Assembly (NCBI RefSeq): GCF_035594765.1
Contig: NC_085845.1
Span: forward strand, 169,462,897 to 169,526,896
Origin: Anolis carolinensis
Lineage: Eukaryota
Direction of reading: 5' to 3'
DNA: 64,000 nucleotides
The first letter of the stretch is position 1. Every line of letters starts with the position of its first letter. The notes under the pieces are model-generated. The model made no database searches. It worked only from the letters and a program-made list of their open reading frames with translations, and was not told the origin of the DNA. The translations under genes were made by a program, and so were the position numbers. Positions 4,057-64,000 of the stretch are shown piece by piece.

Positions 4057-6154
4057 CTTCACAGTTCTTTCCACGGCCTATTATGCACATCAAGGGTATT
4101 GACAATCGCTCAGTGAAGTTCTCAGCTTTTTGTCCCAGTGCCTCCCTTATTGTCTGGAACCCACTCACTATTACAACAGGTTTCCATTCAGCCTGAAGTG
4201 ATAAGACTGGTCCGTATCTTTCCACCAGCTGTGGCAAAAAAAAGAAAGAAAGAAAGAAAGAAAAACGGGAGAGGGGAGGAAATCAATTTAAAATACAGAA
4301 GAAAAACACAGAGAAGCCCAAACTATGTAACCAGTATATATTGTAAAAGCCAAAAGATTGAATGTATTTCATGCTTATAATCCTTTTTCAAAGATAGTTT
4401 CAATATAAATTTAAAGAAAAGAAAGAGAAAAGACAGAGATTTCCAAGAATGCCGTCTGCCTTTTCTAAAGCTAGCTTCCCCTATTGAATCACATATTTTC
4501 CTATCCATACCAGTGAAGTCGTCGCTATTTATCTTTCCCTCTCATTAACTGGTACTCTACAAAAAGAAGAAACAAAAGGGAAAGCAGTAGAGAAAGACAG
4601 GTGAACTCATTCTGGATGACAACAATATCCAGAAACTCTGCAATGATATTAAGAACCTATAAATGATAGAATAATTAAAGCCTCGTTGGGTAACACCCCC
4701 TCTTTCTGAGTCCAGTTAGTTTAGATAGTCATATTTATTTGTCCTAAATCCATCCCAGCAATTAAAGGCAACCCAACAACATTTGGAAAGCTGCATGGTT
4801 CCCATTTCTAATTCAGCTTATGTTGGGATTTTTATATCACCCGAATAGCTGAATATTACACCACATTCTAAATATGCCACCTGGTGTCCATTTTGGCCCA
4901 GATCTCAAGCTTTCAATAAAAAAAGGAGTATGTCTCTAACTCTCAAAGATATGGAAGAAATGTGGCCACTCTGCAATCAATTTTGTGGATTAGGGGCAGA
5001 TTCTCAAACTGTTAATTCTTTTTCTGGGAAAGATGAAAAGTCATTTAATTCAGGCTTGGGCAGTATGCACATCCATGATATAATTTACTCTTACCACAAT
5101 CTTGTTCAAACCCAAGATGGTCCTCTGGTTTCAAAACAAAAGCACTTCTTTTAAAATGCCCGAAGGCTTTGTTATTATTTTTTGAAAAATCACTTCAGTG
5201 TTTCTTAGAAATGCTGCATTTTGAAATGTGTTCCCTGGTTTTGGATAGAGATGGAATTAGGAGTTGGAGAATCTTGCTGCCCAGTAAATGGGCACTGGAA
5301 ATATTGGGCCAGGAATCACTCTGTAGCTACGTAACTATGGGGATTAGACACTTATAATTTCCAATGTGTTTTTTGTGGACTAATTCTACACATATGTGTG
5401 TTGGGAGTATAGTATGGATATCTGAACTGTTTATTCACACTCACATGTCCTATTAGGTTACATGTACATAAGAAAGAATACAATTTATCTTACAGTGTAA
5501 ACCAGTGGGAGAAGCAAAAGATAGAAAGGTCCTCAGAAAGCATTCATGTCAAGGAGCAATATAGATACAGTGTTAAGGTGAAGGTGGAACACATCTGCCC
5601 TATTGGATTGGCACTCCAATATATATCTCAAGGAATATATTTAAAGTTTTCAAGGGGATTGCTGTGTTAAGTATTTTGCAAGAAAAACAAGAAGCCCCAT
5701 ATCTATTTTATTATTATTATTGAGACTGGGTGACCATCTGTCAAGGGTGTTTTGGTTGTGCTTTGGCTGCATAAAGACAGAAGGGGGCTGGACTAGATGG
5801 CCCAAGGGGTCTCTTCCAACTCATTATTATTATTTTTAGAGTCTTACTTATCCAACATAAATGGGCCAGCAGAACATTGGATAAACAAAAATGTTGGATA
5901 ATAAGGAGGGATTAAGGAAAAGCCTATTAAATGTCAAATTACATTATGACTTTACAAATTAAGCACCAAAACATCATGTTTTACAACAAGTCTACCACTT
6001 GTTTAGGATCATGGCTGCACTTGTGTTATTGTTGGCCATGTTGGCCCGCTGCGTGTTGCTGTCTAGAGAAACAGCTGAGGATCCGGGTGGGAGGCAGACT
6101 GCGTTGGATAATACAGAACGTTGGATGAGCAAAGGTTGGATAAGCAAGACTCTA

Positions 6155-53617: not shown

Positions 53618-55959
53618 AGAGTTTCATGCAACACACTCAGAAATAAGTGTAAAATCAAATCACATAAAAATAGTTTATTCAATTGTTGGATATGAACTAC
53701 AAATAACTATAAAATAATATTACAATTCATATTTTTGGTACAAAACACAGCTCAAGCAAACATCTTTTAAAAATAATAAAAAAAGACATGCAATATAAAT
53801 GTGCTGTTCATTACTAGAGTGTAAAGCACCACAAAGATACAGGGTTTATTGTATGACATGATATGTTAGATAGGGATGGCATTATTCCGAAAAACTGGAG
53901 AAACATCTGCCTGTGGAATTAAATGTGCTTACAGTGTAATTCACTCTGTGTTCACATCATCAGCCATTCACACAAGTGCTGACAATGCTGCCTTGTTTCA
54001 TGCCAGATTGATTTTATCGGAGTAAAAACAGCAGTTCTTTCTCTCGACTAATATAATTATTCCACTAGGATGTGATAAAATGACTGTGTCATGTAAGGGT
54101 GTGTGTGTGTGTGTGTGGAATAGCTGCTTTTATTGAAATAGAAATGAAATAATAATTGTAATTGGCAATAAACTAAGAATAGTACAATAAGTTATTCCTT
54201 CTGATTTCATACTAAATACTAGACACTAGAGGGGTATATGACTAGATTAATTTTGGACTCTGGATTGGTGGACTCACCAAGCAGTTTTATTCAACTGGCT
54301 TAAGTTTGGAGTGCCCTGATAGGATTCAGTTTTTAATACAAGATATGATTCATAACTTTCTGAAATCAGCAAACTGGAAATTAACTTCTCAACATTTAAT
54401 GAAAATGCTCAAAAACACTAAGCCCTTTCAAATTTCAAACAAATATGTGGCAGGAGTTGCTACATATCTTTAATTAAAAAAACAAAAAACAAATAGCATT
54501 GGAGAAAATTCACTAAAGAATTCTCTTTATGAAGGGAATAAGTCCAAAGTTTGTTCAAGAGCAGCTTTCAGGGATTGGGTGTTTCGAAACAAAGAGGAGC
54601 TAAGATTTTTGGCCCACTGTTGTTATGAAAATATAGAAGCCCTAATTAAGAAACCTGAGATATTTCAGAAGGGTAGAACACACCTTTTTCAGTGAAAGGG
54701 GTGAACATATTTGCAGTAGGGAAGGATACACTATCTATTGTGGCACTTTATTTTTGCCTTTTGTTTTGGTCAGTTTGTATAAAAATGATACATCCTACAA
54801 AGATATCCCTGTAACATGGAAACTACAGTGAATGCAAAACACTTCAATACATTTTAAAAAAGATTTCTGCACAATTGGCACCAAAGTTATGCAAAGGGGT
54901 GGATGATGGATTGATGTGGATCCATTTTTCAAACAATAATCCAATGCTACATTTTTCCAGGTTTTTTACATTACAAAATCTCTTTTAATTATTTTTTCCT
55001 GACAGAACTACCAACTACTGAACAGTGGAAAATTTCTGCAGTGTATTATTTCCACATAAGCAATGCCATCACCCTGATAGAATGTTTAATTGAGATTGGA
55101 AGATGGAACTGTTAATTCCAAAATAATCCCTGCTTTTCTTCATCGGTGATGTTTTTTTACACAGAGAATATGAGGGAAACACACTGAATACCTGCAGAAT
55201 TTGACTGTGTATGTATACACAGTCAAATTCATCCACTTTGGAGGAGACTTGCTTTCGCTCAGACATGTCTCAAAATGATCTGATCCCCTTCCTGGTTTGG
55301 GATTAATCTGAACCTGAAGCACACCCTTGGTAAATAATAGTTTCATTGACTCAACAATAAAATATAGTTGAAGGTTAGTTATGTGCAAAACCTTGAAACA
55401 GAAACTGTATCCAAAGGTCAAGAAAGTAGCATTATGCTAGTATGTGTACTTGAACAAAAAGAATGATTATTTCTGTAGAGATCATTTGCAGTGTAAATCC
55501 AGCTGGAGTTAACTTTGAAGGCACATAACAAGCACAGAAAGGAAGTTAGCCTTAACCTGACTTTTCAACATTGAATTTTTAATACCCTGGCCTTTCAATG
55601 TCAAAAGAACCATTCTCAAATGTTATTCTGAAATGTAGTGTCCTTTAACTTCAATGCATTTATGTAGATAATGTAAAGAATCCTTACCAGAGGAAACACG
55701 TCTACACTGCCTTATATCCCAGGATTGATCCTGGATTATCTGCTTTGAATTGGATTATATGAGGCACCTTTCACACAGCTGAATAAAATCCCACATTATC
55801 TGCTTTGAACTGGAATCTATGGCAGTGTGGACTCAGATAACCCAGTCCAAAGCAGTTATTGTGAGATTTTTCTGCCTTGATATTCTGGGTTATATGGCTG
55901 TGTGGAAGGGCGCTGAATCTACATGGCCAGATAATCTGGGATAAGCAGATAAATTGGGA

Positions 55960-56300
55960 TTTATTTATTTATGTATTGTGTCAGAAGCGAGTCGAGGGTA
56001 CAGTTGTAATGTATTTAAAAATGCAAACACTTTTTAAAAAAAAACAACACAAAAAACTTGGCATTATACTAAATTTGACCAGTAGCTGGCCACTTGGAGT
56101 GTCTCTAGTGTTGCTATAAGAAGGTCCTCCATTGTCCATGTGGCAGGGTTTAGACTGGTCAGTGGTTTGATCTTCTCCACACTCGCATGTCGTGGACTCC
56201 TCTTTGTGGCCCTATTTCTTAAGGTTGGCTCTGCATCTCGTGGTGCCAGAGTGCAGTCTTCCAAGTCGACATCAAATGCATGTCAGCTGCCAAAGAACAG
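55960..56300 (-). mobile_element. Vingi (Ingi-related) LINE 3' fragment
   Basis: C-terminal ..TCECGEDQTT..LNPATWTMEDLLIATLETLQVASYWS..; 3' end CTCGACTCGCTTCTGACAC + (TAAA)n. Confidence 0.7.
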
Positions 56301-57427
56301 CTGCTTTATTTGGAATCAGATCCTGGGATATAGGACAGATCCAGCCCTAGACCACCCTTAGGAGACAGTTGCATTGAGAGTGATGCTGGGAAACTGAGTA
56401 AATAAATCAGGGTGGGGATCATATAGCTTTCCAGGTGTTGCTGGATAGCAATTCCAAGCATTGTCACAGCTATCTGGGGCTACTGTGAATTACAGTCAAC
56501 ACTATCTAAAGAGCCACATGATTTCTACCCTTGGATTAAAGTGTTGTACATTATTACAATATTACAATGAAGACTAGCTGCCTCTAGTTACTTCCTTCAC
56601 ATATTATTCAGATTATTTTGTTTCTCTTGGAGTTTAATCTTCAAATACTGACTCTAAATGTACAAAAATGCATACCTGGGTTGTGGATGTGGGACATTTC
56701 CTGACACATTATTTTGTAAGGGATACTTCAATGAGATGGCTGGATATTTTCTGGTTCAAATTTGATTGGACTATAAAGTCATTAAAGAGTAGGCTACTGT
56801 TCTCCCACCTTTATCTCCATCTGTGATATGGATATAATAAAGCCAGCCTACCTCATCAGGCTGTTGTAACTAACCTTCATATACACAAACTATTCTGAAT
56901 ATTTAAATGGTGTCATATAAATACTATTATCATTCTTGTGAGTGAATATATTTACCATGCTGCACAATTCACAGCATAGTCTTCTCAACAATAAATCTTA
57001 AAGTAACTGCAATATATAGATATTGTAGGATACAAGAAAAAAGATGGTGATACACAGATCCCTCTCATGTATCAAGAAGCTGCAATTTCAAAATAGAGAA
57101 CCACAGCACTATTTTGAGTCTCAGTCAATGTCTGAAAAAAATATGATAGCCTATTGAAAATACACCTTCTACTTGGGTAGACTATGCATGATTCTTTGGG
57201 ATGTTGTGGCTATTTTATGATTCCCAAGAAATACTACATTGGGGGCATGGCTAACCCACAATATACTTTTAACTGCAATTAAATATTCCAGAGATAAATA
57301 TGAATTCTTTGGCAACTGTGTTGTTTGGAAGAACAATCCATAAGGGCAGCAAAACTGCTGGAAAAATGAACCTGATATCCATTTTTTCCTAAAAAATAAA
57401 AAACCACTTCAAAAGTAGATGCTTTTC

Positions 57428-58219
57428 TTACCACCTTTCTCCTCTCTTTGGACTATCCAGCCATTCCTTTCTCACCTCTGCAATCTCCTGACCATACCAA
57501 TCATGCAATTTTGAGAAACATGTTGTCTCGGGAGACACAGGACTTTCTTGCCCAGGAGAGGCAAGGCCAGAAGCGATGCCTCCACTCACGTTGCTGCCTG
57601 TGGGTTTGCGACGCGGAGGCAAAGGAGGAGGTTTTAAATGTTCCAAAGAGACAACGTCTGTAAAAGTGCAGCCACTATCCCACGTGGAAGACCCATTCTC
57701 TAAGATGACAGGGTGCTCCTTGACTGGTACCATGGCCGGATTGGAGAGATGTCTCTTGCGCACAGAGGTGGCTTTCTTGGGTAATTTGTGGCAGGTGACT
57801 AAACTCTTCCGGGCCTCCTCCAGTTGTTTTTCGAGTTCCTTAACTACTAGCCTCATGTAATCAAAGCTGGCTCGAGACAGTGCCTTCACCCAAGCCTCCA
57901 TAGCCGCTTGGCAGTCAGCAACCAACACATAAGCCTTGCCCCCAGCGCCATCAAAACAGATGGCGAAGGCAAACTCCTCAGCAGCCTCACACAGCTCCAC
58001 AGTGCAACCCTCGAGCACAATGAGACCCAGCGGCTCACGGCTCTCCCGGTCTTCAAAATAGAATAGCAAGTTGCCCTTCAGGATGAACCAGCGGCGATGG
58101 TAAGAAGTGGTGTGGTGATGGTGATGGTGTCGCTCCACACGTTTGCACAGAAAGCCAGTATGGTCTACTGGAGAGTTACATGTGGCATAATGTGCCACGC
58201 TACGTTCATTCAGCTTCAT
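57428..58219 (-). CDS. PHETA2: Sesquipedalian-2 / PH domain endocytic trafficking adaptor 2 (FAM109B), single coding exon, 263 aa
   Basis: MKLNERSVAHYA start, PH domain (RRWFILKGNLLFYFE..LEGCTVEL..AWVKALSRASF), coiled coil, PPPLPPRR, F&H motif CFSKLHDWYGQEI. PHETA2 rather than PHETA1 by adjacency to SMDT1/NDUFA6. Confidence 0.93.
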   Translation of the reverse strand: MKLNERSVAHYATCNSPVDHTGFLCKRVERHHHHHHTTSYHRRWFILKGNLLFYFEDRESREPLGLIVLEGCTVELCEAAEEFAFAICFDGAGGKAYVLVADCQAAMEAWVKALSRASFDYMRLVVKELEKQLEEARKSLVTCHKLPKKATSVRKRHLSNPAMVPVKEHPVILENGSSTWDSGCTFTDVVSLEHLKPPPLPPRRKPTGSNVSGGIASGLASPGQESPVSPETTCFSKLHDWYGQEIAEVRKEWLDSPKRGERW

Positions 58220-59103
58220 CTTCTAATATTATTTTGCAAAGTGAAATGAGAGGAAATGTACAGACCTGCTCCTGGAGGAGATTACTAATCCAGCTAGTAC
58301 TTCATATACACTAGAGCTGCTGAAACAGCAAACCTTTCACAGCACAGATATCAGGGGGGCTTTCCTTTCATGCACCAACTCATGGAGGAATAATCTTTCT
58401 TTCTTCTTTACTAGGCTATTGATGCATCACTGACATCAGAACAGGCTGGCAGATAAGTGTTTTCCTTTTCATCCCTATCACATGATGTTAGTGAACTGGC
58501 CAAACAGAAAATGACTTTCACGCCTAGAAACATCTGACAACGGCCCATATCTGAGTGTTTGCCTACTTCATTAAACTGTTCAGTCTTTTTTACTTATTTC
58601 TTATCATGATAAAACTGAGTCCAACTGAGTCAAGCCTTTGCAGATGTAAACATCCTTGTTTGTGTAGACATTGACTGTGTAGATAAGAAAGAGTGCAACA
58701 GTGATGTTGATTCTGTTGTTATCCAGCTATTTCCCAGTCTTGAAGATTTCAGTGACTTCATTTCTCTCTGCAACCAATGTTGGTCTGTGCAAAAATGTGG
58801 AGATTCAGCTGAAATAGATAATTGACATTTCCATTGTAAAATATGTTGAGAGAGAGAGAGAGAACGAGAACGCAAATGCAGGATAGAACCCACAAACTCA
58901 AGAACTTTCTGTATGCTTTTGTGGAAATTTGTTGTTTGGCTGCTGCAGTTTCAAGCTAACTTTGAATTGCATTAAATGGTCAAAATAGATAGGGCCCAAG
59001 ATGACCCTATCACAGGACTTTCTGAGGCTGAGAGGATGTAACTTGTCCAAGATCACCCAACGGGGTTCCTGTGGCTGGGTAAGGATTCAAACTCTGTTCT
59101 CTT

Positions 59104-59305
59104 GAGTCACCATGCTGGTTCCCACCTTTAGGTAGACCTAGGAGATAATACCTTGAAGAGAACCACCCCCATCCATAAGTCTAACAGACAAAACCAGCAT
59201 CCAGAGTCACCATGCTGGCTCCCACCTTTAGATAGAACTAGGAGATAATACCTTGGAGAGATCCCCCCCCCCCCCCCCCATACATCTAATCGTAGACAAA
59301 ACCAA
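59104..59305 (+). repeat. ~100-bp tandem duplication
   Basis: GAGTCACCATGCTGG..CCCACCTTTAG..CTAGGAGATAATACCTTG..AGACAAAACCA occurs twice. Confidence 0.85.
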
Positions 59306-59346
59306 GTTAAATAAACAGCAGTCTAGGTCAAAACCATCTAAGAGGA

Positions 59347-59606
59347 TTTCTCCAGAGGTTCTGAAAGCCAAGTATGGAAAAAGTGGCTTGTAGAGGAGGG
59401 TTTTTTTGTGATTGGCTTCATTTGAGAGGAAATTGTACTTGAAGGCACATCACAAGAACACACTTAGGGCATTACATGGCTCTTCCCCTTGTTGATTCAA
59501 AGTATCTTAAGAGTTTATGTACATTTGATGCCACTTTCACTACCAAGGCTCAATGCTATGAAATCTGGGGAGCTGTACTTTTTAGCCTTCTCTGTCAAGC
59601 TACAAC
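59347..59606 (+). repeat. Local ~260-bp duplication; empty-site copy of 60738-60921 + 62119-62194
   Basis: High identity across the junction; single ATTTGATG at 59523-59530. Confidence 0.9.
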
Positions 59607-59948
59607 AGCCTCTCCAACTAAGCCAAGAAAAGTTCAATATCTATCCTCCAATATCTATCCTCTAGACTGCACCACTATCTTATGACCCTGTTATTTGTGG
59701 TTTTTATTCTTATTTCTTTCTCACCCCGAGTTTTAACTTAGTGTTCATGTGGCCCGCCCTTGTTTTTATTGTTCCCCTGATTTTGCGTTGTAATGTATAT
59801 TATTATCTATTGTATTGTTCAATGTGTTATGATGTGTTGTTCTTTTATATTCTGTCATATTGTATTGTTCTGGGCATGGCCCCATGTAAGCCGCCCCAAG
59901 TCCCCGTTGGGGAGATGGTGGCGGGGTATAAATAAAGTTTTTTTTAAA

Positions 59949-59994
<46 letters not shown>
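59949..59994. repeat. (ATT)n microsatellite following an L2-like tail
   Basis: Direct inspection. Confidence 0.9.
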
Positions 59995-59997
<3 letters not shown>

Positions 59998-60921
59998 CAC
60001 AAACAGGAATATCTTCCTACACCTCTTTAGCAAGCAGAAAGCGAACTGGCAGCATCCCTTGGGAGGTTCTCCTGTATATAGAGCCCCAGGCAGCAGATAC
60101 TGTAGGGTGCAACATGAAGTTTGATCATTGGGCCCCTCAACTAGTTTGCTAAGGCCGAAATGCTTTTGAGAAAGAGCTTTTCAAAGTTTTTTCAAACTCA
60201 TGAGCTTGCCTAGGTTTCTTTAGGGCATCTGGAGCTGGGTCTACATTGCCATTTAGTGTAGTTTGGAACGGCATTATATGGTGTAGTGGAGACATGGTAA
60301 TGCAGTTAAACCATTATATGGATTTACACTGAATTATGAGACAGTGCAGATCCAGCTTGGGACAGAAGATGGTTTGGAAGTCAAGGCCGAGCCACCTATT
60401 TAAAAAAAACAGTTTTGAAAATGTTTAAATGTGAAGTAAGGAGTCTTACCTTGCTGAAATATTGGAGATCTAACGCTCAGGATTCAATCTGATCATCAGT
60501 TAGTTGTCTCCGCTTTCGTTTTGGTTGTCTCAGTAGTTTTTTCCCCCTCTCCTCTTCCTTTTCTCTCTGGCTATTATTGGTGTGGATGTTTATAGTGCAA
60601 AACCCGGAACATGGGACAGTCCCTGGAATAGCCAATGCAGGACCCTTTGGGGGTAGCTCTTCGGAGATCCAGGTTTTCCAGCAACCTCGCATCAGAGAAA
60701 GCAGATTTCTCTTTCCCTCCCTCCCTCCCTTCCCTCTTTTCTCCAGAGGTCCTGAAAGCCACGTATAGAAAAAAGTGGCTTGTAGGGGAGTTTTTTTTGT
60801 GATTGGCCTCTTTTGAGAGGAAATTATACTTGAAGGCACATCACAAGAACACACTTAAAGCATTACATGGTTCTTCCCCTTATTGATTCAAAGTATCTTA
60901 AGAGTTTATGTACATTTGATG

Positions 60922-62110
60922 CAGGGCCGGCCGGAGATATTTTTTAATGGGAAGCGGGGGTGCTGAAAAGCGCCCCCGCCACCCGCGCCCTGGCCCCGCC
61001 CAGCGTGCCCTGGCCCCGCCTCCCACGCTGCGTGGGAGGCGGGGCCAGGGCGATTAGTGAGGGGGGCGGGGCCACAGTTGGCCCCGCCCCCGCCCAGCGT
61101 GGCCATTTTGCCCTTAGTAACAAACTAAGGGCAAAAATGGCTTATCTGGCTGTGCGCATGCGCACAGCCAGATAAGCCATTTTTGCCCTTAGTTTGTTAC
61201 TAAGGGCAAAATGGCCTAGGTGTGCTGTGCGCACGCGCACAGCACACCTAGGCCATTCGGGCCTGACTTCCTGGTCGCGGCCGGCGACCGCCCGGGCGAT
61301 CGCCGGCCGCGACCAGGAAGTCAGGCCCGAATGGGCTATCTGCGCTGTGCGCACGGGCACAGCGCAGATAGCCCATTCGGGCCTGACTTCCTGGTCGCGG
61401 CCGGCGATCGCCCGGGCGGTCGCCGGCCGCGACCAGGAAGTCAGGCCCGAATGGCCTAGGTGTGCTGTGCGCGTGCGCACAGCACACCTAGGCCATTTTG
61501 CCCTTAGTAACAAACTAAGGGCAAAAATGGCTTCTCTGGCTGTGCGCATGCGCACAGCCAGAGAAGCCATTTTTGCCCTTAGTTTGTTACTAAGGGCAAA
61601 ATGGCCTAGGTGTGCTGTGCGCACGCGCACAGCACACCTAGGCCATTCGGGCCTGACTTCCTGGTCGCGGCCGGCGACCGCCCGGGCGATCGCCGGCCGC
61701 GACCAGGAACTTCCTGGTCGCGGCCGGCGATCGCCCGGGCGGTCGCCGGCCGCGACCAGGAAGTCAGGCCCGAATGGCCTAGCTGTGCTGTGCGCGTGCG
61801 CACAGCACAGCTAGGCCATTTTGCCCTTAGTAACAAACTAAGGGCAAAAATGGCTTCTCTGGCTGTGCGCATGCGCACAGCCAGAGAAGCCATTTTTGCC
61901 CTTAGTTTGTTACTAAGGGCAAAATGGCCTAGCTGTGCTGTGCGCACGCGCACAGCACAGCTAGGCCATTCGGGCCTGACTTCCTGGTCGCGGCCGGCGA
62001 CCGCCCGGGCGATCGCCGGCCGCGACCAGGAAGTCAGGCCCGAATGGCGCCCCTAGCAGCCAGCGCCCGAGGCGGCCGCGTCCGCGGCCGCCTAGTAACA
62101 ACCGGCCCTG
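60922..62110. mobile_element. Non-autonomous hAT-type DNA transposon (1189 bp) filled with a nested palindrome array
   Basis: TIR CAGGGCCGG / CCGGCCCTG; perfect 8-bp TSD ATTTGATG (60914-60921, 62111-62118); subterminal GCGCCC motifs; no coding capacity; very CpG-rich. Confidence 0.92.
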
Positions 62111-62301
62111 ATTTGATGCCACTTTCACTGCCAAGGCTCAATGCTATGAAATCTGGGGAGCTGTACTTTTTAGCCTTCTCTGTCAAGCTACAACTTCCAT
62201 GTTTCCATAGCATTCAGCCAGGATGGTTAAAGTGGGTGCAAACTGCATTCATTCTACAATGGGGATCTACCCTTATTTCCTTTGGTACTGATGTTTCAAC
62301 C

Positions 62302-62470
62302 CAAGCATGGGCAAACTTGGGCCCTCCGGGTGTTTTGGACTCCAACTCCCACCATTCCTAACAGCCTCAGCTTAAGCGGCTGAGGGGGAAAAGGAAAGGG
62401 CCTGAGGCTGTTAGGAATGGTGGGAGTTGGAGTCCAAAACACCCGGAGGGCCCAAATTTGTTCATGTCTG
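62302..62470. mobile_element. Palindromic hAT MITE (same family as 24687-24844)
   Basis: CAAGCATGGGCAAAC..GGGCCCAAATTTGTTCATGTCTG arms. Confidence 0.75.
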
Positions 62471-63177
62471 TTTTGTCTTATCTGGATTTGAAATAGTTGC
62501 AAAACAGCAACACAAAACCTCGTATTAAACAGTTCTTCTATTTAACAAAGGTTTGATTTCTCTTTATAGGACACATAACAATAGAACAACTCTCTGCAAC
62601 CGGAAAGGATTTTCTTCTCTTGCGAAAGGCCTGCTGTATGAAAATATAAACAAAGAAAATGCTGATTTAACACTTTGACTCATTATTTTCACTTACAGTC
62701 ACAAGAGGGCACCACTGTCCCATATGTACAACTGGAGTAAAAAAGGCTCTTCAATCACGAATCAAAGAGTACCAGTTTCCCCAAGTGTATCTAAGACAAT
62801 GGCAGTGAAATAAAAAGACTTTTGCTGACAGTAGAATCAGAACTTTCTAAGTTCTTACCAAACTCCCAACATGGTGTCGTGGGGGAAACGCTGGGCTAGG
62901 GAATTATATAGAAAAGCCTTTGAGATATTTTAGAAATAGAAACCCACTATCCTTGGTATTTGACAAGAATTAGTAATGGGTGAGTGAAAACAACTTTCAC
63001 ATTTTTGGGGCAAACATTATTTCATTGTGGCATACTGCATCAAGGTGGTTTGCAATAATAACTTGGTCTGCAAAAAACAAAATTGCGTCCTTGTTTCATT
63101 TTTCTTCTTCTCTAGGCCTTCACCTTCATTCATTCTTTATGGCTAAAGCAAATTTCCCATTGTAAACAAAGGGCATA

Positions 63178-64000
63178 TCTGGGTTGCTGTGAGTTTTCCA
63201 GGCTGTATGGCCATGTTCCAGAAGCATTCTCTCCTGACATTTTGGCAGGCATACTCAGAGGTTGTGAGGTGTTGGAAAATAGGAAAATGGGGTTTATATA
63301 TCTGTGGAATGTCCAGGGTGGAAAAAAGAAGTCTTGCCTGTTGGAGGCAAGTGGGAATGTTGCAATTGATCACCTTGATTAGCATTGAATGACCTTGCAG
63401 CTTCAAAGCTTAGCTGCTTCCTGCCTCGGGAAATCCTTTGTTGAGAGGATGAACCAACCTGGGCACAGCATATTATTTGAGAACACAGAAAGGCTAGACC
63501 ACGCTAACAACTACCATGTCAGACTATACAGAGAAGCCATTGAAATCTACAAGCATGTGGACAATTTCAACAGAAAGGCAAAAACCATGAAAATGAACAA
63601 AATCTGGCTGCCAGTATTTTAAAAACTCTAAAATCAGGACAGTAAATAAAGAACACCTCTCAGAAAACAAAGGAATTCCAGACATGAATCAATCAGGGCC
63701 AGCTAACACCTCCCAACAAAGGATTCCCTGAGGCAGGAAGCAGCCAAAGTTTGAAGCTGCAAGGCTATTCAATGCTAATCAAGGTGATTAACTGCAACAT
63801 TCACACTTGCTTCAAACACAAGAATCCTTTCTCCCACCCTGGACATTCCACAGATATATAAACCCCACTTAGTTTCCAACAAACCTCAAAACCTCTGAAG
63901 ATGCTTGCCATAGATGTGGGTGAAACATCAGGAGGGAATGCTCCTAGAACATGGCCATACTGCCCGGAAAACTCACAGCAACCCAGTGATTTCAGCCATG
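63178..64000. mobile_element. Penelope-like element with inverted pLTR arms (runs off right edge)
   Basis: Arm 63178-63447 is the reverse complement of ~63710-63986; the middle encodes NQPGHSILFENTERLDHANNYHVRLYREAIEIYKHVDNFNRK. Confidence 0.87.

What the first reader, a model, noticed from the sequence alone, without database searches (positions are those of the whole stretch)
60922..62110. hAT element whose interior is a recursive ('fractal') palindrome array
Seen: 61101-62047 consists entirely of five hairpin modules. A = CCATTTTGCCCTTAG-taacaaa-CTAAGGGCAAAAATGG; B = palindrome centred on TGCGCATGCGCA; C = CCTAGGTGTGCTGTGCGC-ac-GCGCACAGCACACCTAGG; D = 82-bp CCATTCGGG..CCCGAATGG; E = B/C-like. 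Order: A B A' C D E D' C' A B A' C D D' C' A B A' C D. Each module is self-complementary, and the order creates overlapping giant palindromes: 61101-61606 (centre E), 61388-61709 (perfect, centre second B), 61373-62047 (centre 61710) and 61709-62034 (perfect, centre third B). CCATT..AATGG modules alternate with GCTGTGCGC..GCGCACAGC modules, except where E was lost at 61710 (period 390 then 323 bp). Further hairpins sit in both subterminal regions (e.g. 61007-61051). Inference: this is neither a simple MITE foldback nor a head-to-tail satellite. It looks like the product of repeated hairpin-primed fold-back synthesis, carried by a still-mobile hAT shell that can form many alternative cruciforms.
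Basis: partly seen in the sequence, partly recalled or inferred. Interest (0 to 1): 0.9.

Follow-up and report, generated by a model that had tools for sequence, protein, structure and literature searches.

The report
Mirror-built hairpin array in lizard transposon
A young 1.2-kb jumping element in an anole lizard is filled by one 195-letter piece mirrored back and forth into stacked hairpins that carry housekeeping-promoter motifs; it is real and unusual, but it is a variant of known repeat-carrying transposons.

Summary
Observation confirmed. 60922-62110 is a non-autonomous hAT element: 9-bp terminal repeats, 8-bp target duplication. The empty site is seen in a local paralogue, in A. sagrei and in reads of other animals, so the insertion is young and polymorphic.

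The 945-bp interior reduces to one 195-bp half-unit reflected about two mirror centres (B and E), plus one near-symmetric 67-bp deletion. It is a mirror-symmetric tandem array of hairpins, not a true fractal. All six substitutions outside loops are mirror-paired (two events), so arm-to-arm copying happened in the family's history. That fold-back synthesis, rather than ordinary tandem duplication, expanded the array is not shown.

The modules are abundant in four independent runs, so they are a family trait. Period number and the junction at 61710 were not spanned by any read.

The modules carry exact YY1, NRF1 and ETS consensus sites (p about 0.001, symmetry-preserving null, post hoc), with Sp1 boxes at the left end. 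No paper on this architecture was found; Repbase/Dfam could not be checked. The scan noted similar elements several times elsewhere in this genome. Verdict: new variant of a known kind.

The parts
60914..60921 (+). left target-site duplication ATTTGATG
   Evidence: single copy in empty alleles
60922..60930 (+). left terminal inverted repeat (9 bp, fits hAT YARNG)
60931..61100 (.). left subterminal region: GC-box repeats and three hairpins (60953-60978, 61007-61051, 61062-61091); four GGGCGGR Sp1 matches
61103..61214 (.). A-B-A' block 1; A carries a YY1 consensus, B an NRF1 consensus; B variant 'AT' (61144/61173)
61215..61492 (.). C-D-E-D'-C' block, mirror centre E at 61353/61354; D carries ETS sites and 10-bp sub-palindromes at its centre
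61354..61548 (+). 195-bp half-unit whose reflection about the B and E centres rebuilds the whole array
61493..61604 (.). A-B-A' block 2 (centre of perfect palindrome 61388-61709)
61605..61815 (.). C-D/D'-C' block with a 67-bp near-symmetric deletion of the E centre at 61709/61710; the C variant changes from GT to CT across this junction
61816..62047 (.). A-B-A' block 3, C (CT variant) and final D
62048..62101 (.). right subterminal region with hairpin 62070-62093 and a 9-nt stretch shared with the centre of module A
62102..62110 (-). right terminal inverted repeat
62111..62118 (+). right target-site duplication
59347..59606 (+). local paralogue of the insertion site, without the element (single ATTTGATG at 59523-59530)

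Best explanation
A young, polymorphic copy of an abundant non-autonomous hAT family, moved in trans by an unidentified hAT transposase (insertion shown; partner inferred). Its interior descends from a short two-hairpin unit, one X hairpin (A/D class) plus one Y hairpin (B/C/E class), which was duplicated, diverged and mirrored (homology shown for Y, weak for X). Template switching between hairpin arms copies changes to the mirror arm at both the module scale and the 320-bp scale (the pattern is shown; the enzymatic route is inferred). The most likely occasion is single-stranded synthesis during replication or gap repair after excision. Period number then changes by further mirror copying or plain tandem duplication (not distinguished). 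Hairpin tips are sometimes clipped and resealed, as at 61710 (inferred). The raw material looks like housekeeping-promoter sequence, so each insertion delivers a CpG-island-like patch (sequence shown; function not tested).
For: Target duplication, terminal repeats and empty alleles. The whole array equals a 195-bp half-unit under two mirrors, one deletion and six mirror-paired substitutions; rough chance of such pairing about 1e-14 if substitutions were independent. All differences among B, C and E in the outer arm are mirrored on the other arm. The C variant occupies both arms and both C and C' around the third B, which tandem duplication alone cannot produce. The deletion is symmetric to within 1 nt. 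Modules are abundant in four independent studies. Template switching that perfects inverted repeats: PMC5941160; fold-back inverted duplications at breaks: PMC11724301; gap repair with template switching in non-autonomous element formation: PMC3814204.
Against: The A bulge and the C, D and E centre asymmetries persist in every copy, so arm correction is infrequent. Both B and both C variants appear common across the family (contig level), so this copy may be a mosaic of subfamilies rather than a record of its own growth. No second full-length copy and no autonomous partner could be retrieved. No read spans the element.
Confidence: 0.65

Rival explanations
1. Selected mobile CpG island: the family kept and multiplied YY1, NRF1, ETS and Sp1 sites because bound host factors keep it unmethylated and open, which favours its transposition. 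The hairpins are the means of multiplying and repairing the motifs.
For: Of 28 published conserved promoter motifs (list in PMC1702496) the array holds only #1 NRF1, #10 YY1, #16 ETS2 and #22 (an NRF1 half-site). Three or more core motifs arise in 0.14-0.27% of symmetry-preserving shuffles, and four GC boxes in the left end in 15 of 2000. The 10 inner Y-arm columns holding the NRF1 half-site are invariant while 6 of 9 outer columns vary (Fisher p 0.003). CpG o/e 0.95 against 0.31 for the window.
Against: The test was post hoc, prompted by another note of the scan. NRF1 sites arise easily in GC-rich palindromes (4-12% of shuffles). Capture of a promoter fragment explains the motifs without selection. 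Inner-arm constancy could reflect more frequent conversion near loops. Youth explains CpG retention. No methylation, chromatin or binding data.
Confidence: 0.25
2. Ordinary MITE-borne satellite: a 390-bp unit that happened to consist of two palindromes was tandemly duplicated by slippage or unequal exchange; the higher-order palindromes are a geometric by-product with no continuing fold-back.
For: The array is formally a tandem repeat of period 390, then 323. Arrays riding inside MITEs are known (Xstir/Xmix, miDNA4). The switch of C variant at the junction could be an exchange between two family copies.
Against: It does not explain how the 390-bp unit became two nested palindromes, nor why every substitution is mirrored. 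It can account for the expansion step only.
Confidence: 0.3
3. Assembly or sequencing artefact: period number or the junction at 61710 was produced by fold-back chimeras or mis-assembly.
For: No contig spans the element. The junction region has little or no depth in two of four runs. Palindromes are hard to sequence.
Against: Up to 0.90 of sampled 31-mers of the 2.5-kb stretch occur in other animals. The target duplication is exact. The variants are structured and shared with the family. The source is a 207-Mb chromosome record, GCA_035594765.1, which I recall as a long-read assembly (not checked). A private insertion is expected to have private junctions.
Confidence: 0.07

Closest known systems
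hAT-N6_AC, hAT-N7_AC, hAT-N8_AC (orphan non-autonomous hATs of Anolis carolinensis; PMC3014272)
   Same: Related terminal repeat (10 of 12 and 9 of 12 positions match CAGAGSCGGYCC); target site fits NNTNNANN of N7/N8; young, abundant, no known autonomous partner.
   Different: Position 4 of the terminus differs at both ends; lengths 810, 288 and 329 bp against 1189; the paper mentions no palindromes or hairpins. Sequence identity could not be tested.
Xenopus MITEs with internal arrays or palindromes (Xmix/Xstir, miDNA4, Harbinger-N12A_XT, Kolobok-N2_XT, hAT-N16_XT)
   Same: Non-coding DNA transposon shell that carries internally repeated sequence, palindromic in two of them.
   Different: None is described, in what I could read, as a two-mirror array of several homologous hairpin modules with mirrored variants; different superfamilies or hosts.
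Foldback elements (Galileo, FB, Tetris)
   Same: Extensive self-complementarity and internal repeats (Tetris; the rest from my own knowledge).
   Different: There the long inverted repeats are the termini; here the termini are 9 bp, the two ends are otherwise unlike, and the symmetry is internal.
Quasi-palindrome correction by template switching (PMC5941160) and fold-back inverted duplication (PMC11724301)
   Same: Predicts mirrored substitutions and new inverted copies.
   Different: Described for single inverted repeats or break junctions in microbes, not for an iterated array inside a vertebrate transposon.
Parvovirus rolling-hairpin termini (own knowledge)
   Same: Asymmetric hairpin loops occur in both orientations (A, C, D).
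   Different: Here this follows from the mirror array; no Rep gene, hairpins not terminal, no match in viral contigs.

Membership tests
hAT superfamily (non-autonomous) | 8-bp target-site duplication | tested here: met
   ATTTGATG on both sides; single in empty alleles
hAT superfamily (non-autonomous) | short terminal inverted repeats beginning YARNG | tested here: met
   9-bp CAGGGCCGG; YARNG from PMC3014272. One base under the 10-25 bp range quoted in PMC3942097
hAT superfamily (non-autonomous) | no transposase of its own | tested here: met
   The three ORFs over the array are repeat read-throughs; the element is 1.2 kb and 80% array
hAT superfamily (non-autonomous) | an autonomous hAT with the same termini in the genome | not testable with these tools
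   The only transposase remnant in the window has a different putative end; no genome-wide DNA search
hAT Tip group | transposase phylogeny | not testable with these tools
   No transposase; likeness of the terminus to MER45/Zaphod is recalled only, and no paper confirmed it
hAT-N6/N7/N8_AC | terminal repeat CAGAGSCGGYCC | tested here: not met
   10/12 and 9/12 matches; G at position 4
hAT-N6/N7/N8_AC | target consensus | tested here: inconclusive
   Fits NNTNNANN (N7, N8), not NTTRYAAN (N6); one site only
hAT-N6/N7/N8_AC | length and identity to the family consensus | not testable with these tools
   Lengths differ; consensus sequences not available
Foldback elements | long terminal inverted repeats forming the two ends | tested here: not met
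   Ends pair over 9 bp only
Transposon-borne tandem array (Xstir/miDNA4 type) | tandem array between transposon termini | tested here: met
   Period 390/323, about 2.5 periods
Transposon-borne tandem array (Xstir/miDNA4 type) | copy-number variation among copies and free arrays | not testable with these tools
   No second full-length copy retrieved
Known structured RNA (miRNA, snoRNA) | Rfam gathering score | tested here: not met
   All matches far below gathering; generic hairpin scores

The most novel reading that the evidence does not exclude
An active vertebrate transposon family whose interior is a self-symmetrising array of housekeeping transcription-factor sites: mirror copying multiplies and repairs YY1, NRF1 and ETS motifs, bound host factors keep copies unmethylated and mobile, and each new insertion seeds a polymorphic CpG-island promoter (here 2.7 kb upstream of the PHETA2 start codon).
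Probability: 0.2. Interest if true: 0.8.

Novelty: new variant of a known kind. Interest (0 to 1): 0.5.

Why it matters
Long perfect palindromes are normally unstable in chromosomes, yet this family carries overlapping 320-bp spacerless ones in many young copies. The copies offer a natural series for measuring arm-to-arm template switching and palindrome-centre loss in a vertebrate germline. If the promoter motifs are functional, the family would be a source of new, polymorphic CpG islands and a case of a transposon using host housekeeping factors to avoid silencing. If they are not, it is a striking but neutral repeat.

Tried and rejected
Other copies in the window: none. Pattern searches: module A absent from metagenome contigs; Y core absent from viral contigs; its 56 metagenome hits share at most about 30 bp with the element and are unrelated short palindromes. 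Rfam: nothing at gathering. Coding potential: ORFs over the array are repeat read-throughs. The bacterial promoter scan is uninformative here. The hAT transposase remnant near 27.0-28.4 kb was considered as the partner and set aside: truncated, interrupted by a stop, different putative terminus; its relatives carry no organism or context and were not pursued. Ten literature searches found no description of this architecture; the original promoter-motif paper was not held. Family-level variants were not used as proof of mirrored change, because short contigs cannot be assigned to one arm of a palindrome. Depth was not turned into a copy number.

Full report
Host and setting. The gene at 57428-58219 (minus strand) is a PH-domain protein whose cluster holds sesquipedalian-2 (PHETA2) of Anolis sagrei and Sceloporus. 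The window matches record CM069371.1 (207 Mb) of GCA_035594765.1 exactly over 55000-64000. That this is the long-read green anole assembly is recalled, not shown by a tool. The element lies 2.7 kb upstream of the PHETA2 start codon. Whether that is intron 1 or upstream of the promoter is not known; it is the only CpG-island-like stretch within 8 kb upstream, and A. sagrei has none within 10 kb.

Observation. Two palindromes are perfect (322 and 326 bp, no spacer), two larger ones have 8 and 9 mismatched positions, and 87% of the element lies in perfect hairpins. The longest arm is 177 bp against 16 bp elsewhere in the window. Corrections: A has a one-base bulge in all six copies, and the loss at 61710 is 67 bp.

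The shell. The ends are 9-bp inverted repeats flanked by an 8-bp duplication. The empty site is seen three ways. A local 260-bp paralogue at 59347-59606 has one copy of the target. The A. sagrei orthologue has one copy. A 954-bp contig of run X19 joins 60913 to 62111 with no other difference and includes non-paralogous flanks; contigs of X1, X2 and X5 end or begin at those same points, which is what an empty allele gives. No listed contig runs from flank into element, but most rows were not shown. The insertion is therefore young and probably rare. The closest published families are the orphan hAT-N6/N7/N8_AC, with related but not identical termini and other lengths; that paper never mentions palindromes.

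The interior. One 195-bp half-unit (61354-61548), reflected alternately about the B and E centres, reproduces 61103-62047 except for the E loop, one 67-bp deletion and six substitutions. About 130 non-redundant letters build 945 bp. The overlapping giant palindromes are the consequence of two mirrors per 390-bp period, so 'fractal' overstates it. The nesting is still real at several scales: 6-10-bp palindromes inside B and D, 36-82-bp modules, and blocks of 112 and 278 bp. B, C and E are homologous, and A and D share their outer ends, which points to an older two-hairpin unit.

Evidence for arm-to-arm copying. The six substitutions are two events. One is mirrored in both arms of the first B. 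The other is present in both arms of C and in both C and C' around the third B. All differences among B, C and E in the outer arms are also mirrored. Tandem duplication cannot move a change between mirror positions; template switching can (PMC5941160). Fold-back synthesis makes inverted duplications at breaks (PMC11724301), and gap repair after excision gives a transposon interior repeated exposure to such switching (PMC3814204). The deletion at 61710 is symmetric to within one base, as clipping and resealing of a hairpin tip would give; by chance this is roughly 3 placements in 67 (my estimate). Limits: the bulge in A was never corrected, and both variants of B and C seem common in the family, so this copy may be a mosaic joined at 61710, where the C variant changes. 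Mirror copying is needed somewhere in the family's history either way; fold-back as the means of expansion is not shown.

Real or artefact. Twenty runs from eight studies hold the stretch, up to 0.90 of sampled words, including a 27-Mb run at 0.64. Summed contig depth over the modules is far above the flanks in all four laid runs, by two to three orders of magnitude in X1, X2 and X5 and about one in X19. The tool warns this is no copy number, so I take it only as showing an abundant family. Short contigs cannot confirm the number of periods, and the junction at 61710 is thinly covered or uncovered in two runs, so it may be private to this copy.

Promoter motifs. This reading came from another note of the scan (s1-579601); I tested it. 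Of 28 published conserved promoter motifs, the array holds NRF1 (11 matches), YY1 (6), ETS2 (9) and an NRF1 half-site; the left end holds four Sp1 boxes. The rest of the window has no NRF1 match. In shuffles that keep the hairpin architecture, three or more core motifs appear in 0.14-0.27% of cases. The NRF1-bearing inner arm is invariant among B, C and E left arms while the outer arm varies (p 0.003), though E's right arm has a change that breaks its site. This suggests promoter-derived raw material or selection. It is a post hoc test and no function was measured.

Comparison with what is known. It works like a non-autonomous hAT carrying an internal array, a known kind (Xstir/Xmix, miDNA4, and Xenopus MITEs with palindromic interiors). 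It meets the testable hAT criteria. It fails the foldback criterion and is not a proven member of hAT-N6/7/8_AC. I found no paper on a two-mirror array of promoter-motif hairpins, but Repbase and Dfam could not be searched. The scan noted similar elements of 571-1659 bp at other places in this genome; I could not see their sequences, so family identity is unverified and they are not independent support.

Verdict. Real, young, family-level and structurally striking; the mechanism is partly shown. New variant of a known kind, interest 0.5, rising to about 0.8 if the motif array proves functional.

Noticed in passing
window 59347-59606: About 94% identical local duplicate of the insertion-site flanks (60738-60913 plus 62111-62194), 1.4 kb away, without the element; A. 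sagrei has the segment once.
   Followed up: yes
window about 26980-28430: 5'-truncated hAT transposase remnant with a stop near 27588 and a Dimer_Tnp_hAT domain; its putative right end differs from this element's terminus.
   Followed up: partly
L001 about 5680-5900 (A. sagrei): An unrelated insertion of about 220 bp, bounded by a short direct repeat, sits a few bases from the same target site; it resembles the repeat at window 63179-63270.
   Followed up: no
window 60972-61055: The left GC-box segment draws about ten times more contig depth than the array in three of four runs, suggesting it is shared with a larger set of elements lacking this array.
   Followed up: no
run X5 on window 60888-62063: Relative to the neighbouring repeat at 62316-62483, the element is several-fold more represented in X5 than in X1 or X2; library type is not on record, so GC bias and an enrichment protocol cannot be told apart.
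   Followed up: no
window 61118 and 61133: Other family copies carry an extra base in the loop of A (about a quarter of depth in X1 and X5) or lack the bulged base (a few per cent).
   Followed up: no
window 62092-62100 and 61115-61123: The centre of module A and the sequence just inside the right terminus share a 9-nt stretch; possible subterminal origin of A or a transposase-binding motif.
   Followed up: partly
window 62112-62242 and 62297-62475: Two older inverted-repeat elements lie directly right of the insertion; the second is very abundant in all runs.
   Followed up: no
Ga0208297 contigs (L003 and others): One metagenome assembly holds about 40 dispersed copies of a short palindromic repeat whose 20-bp core equals the Y-module core; no further similarity, taken as coincidence.
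   Followed up: partly
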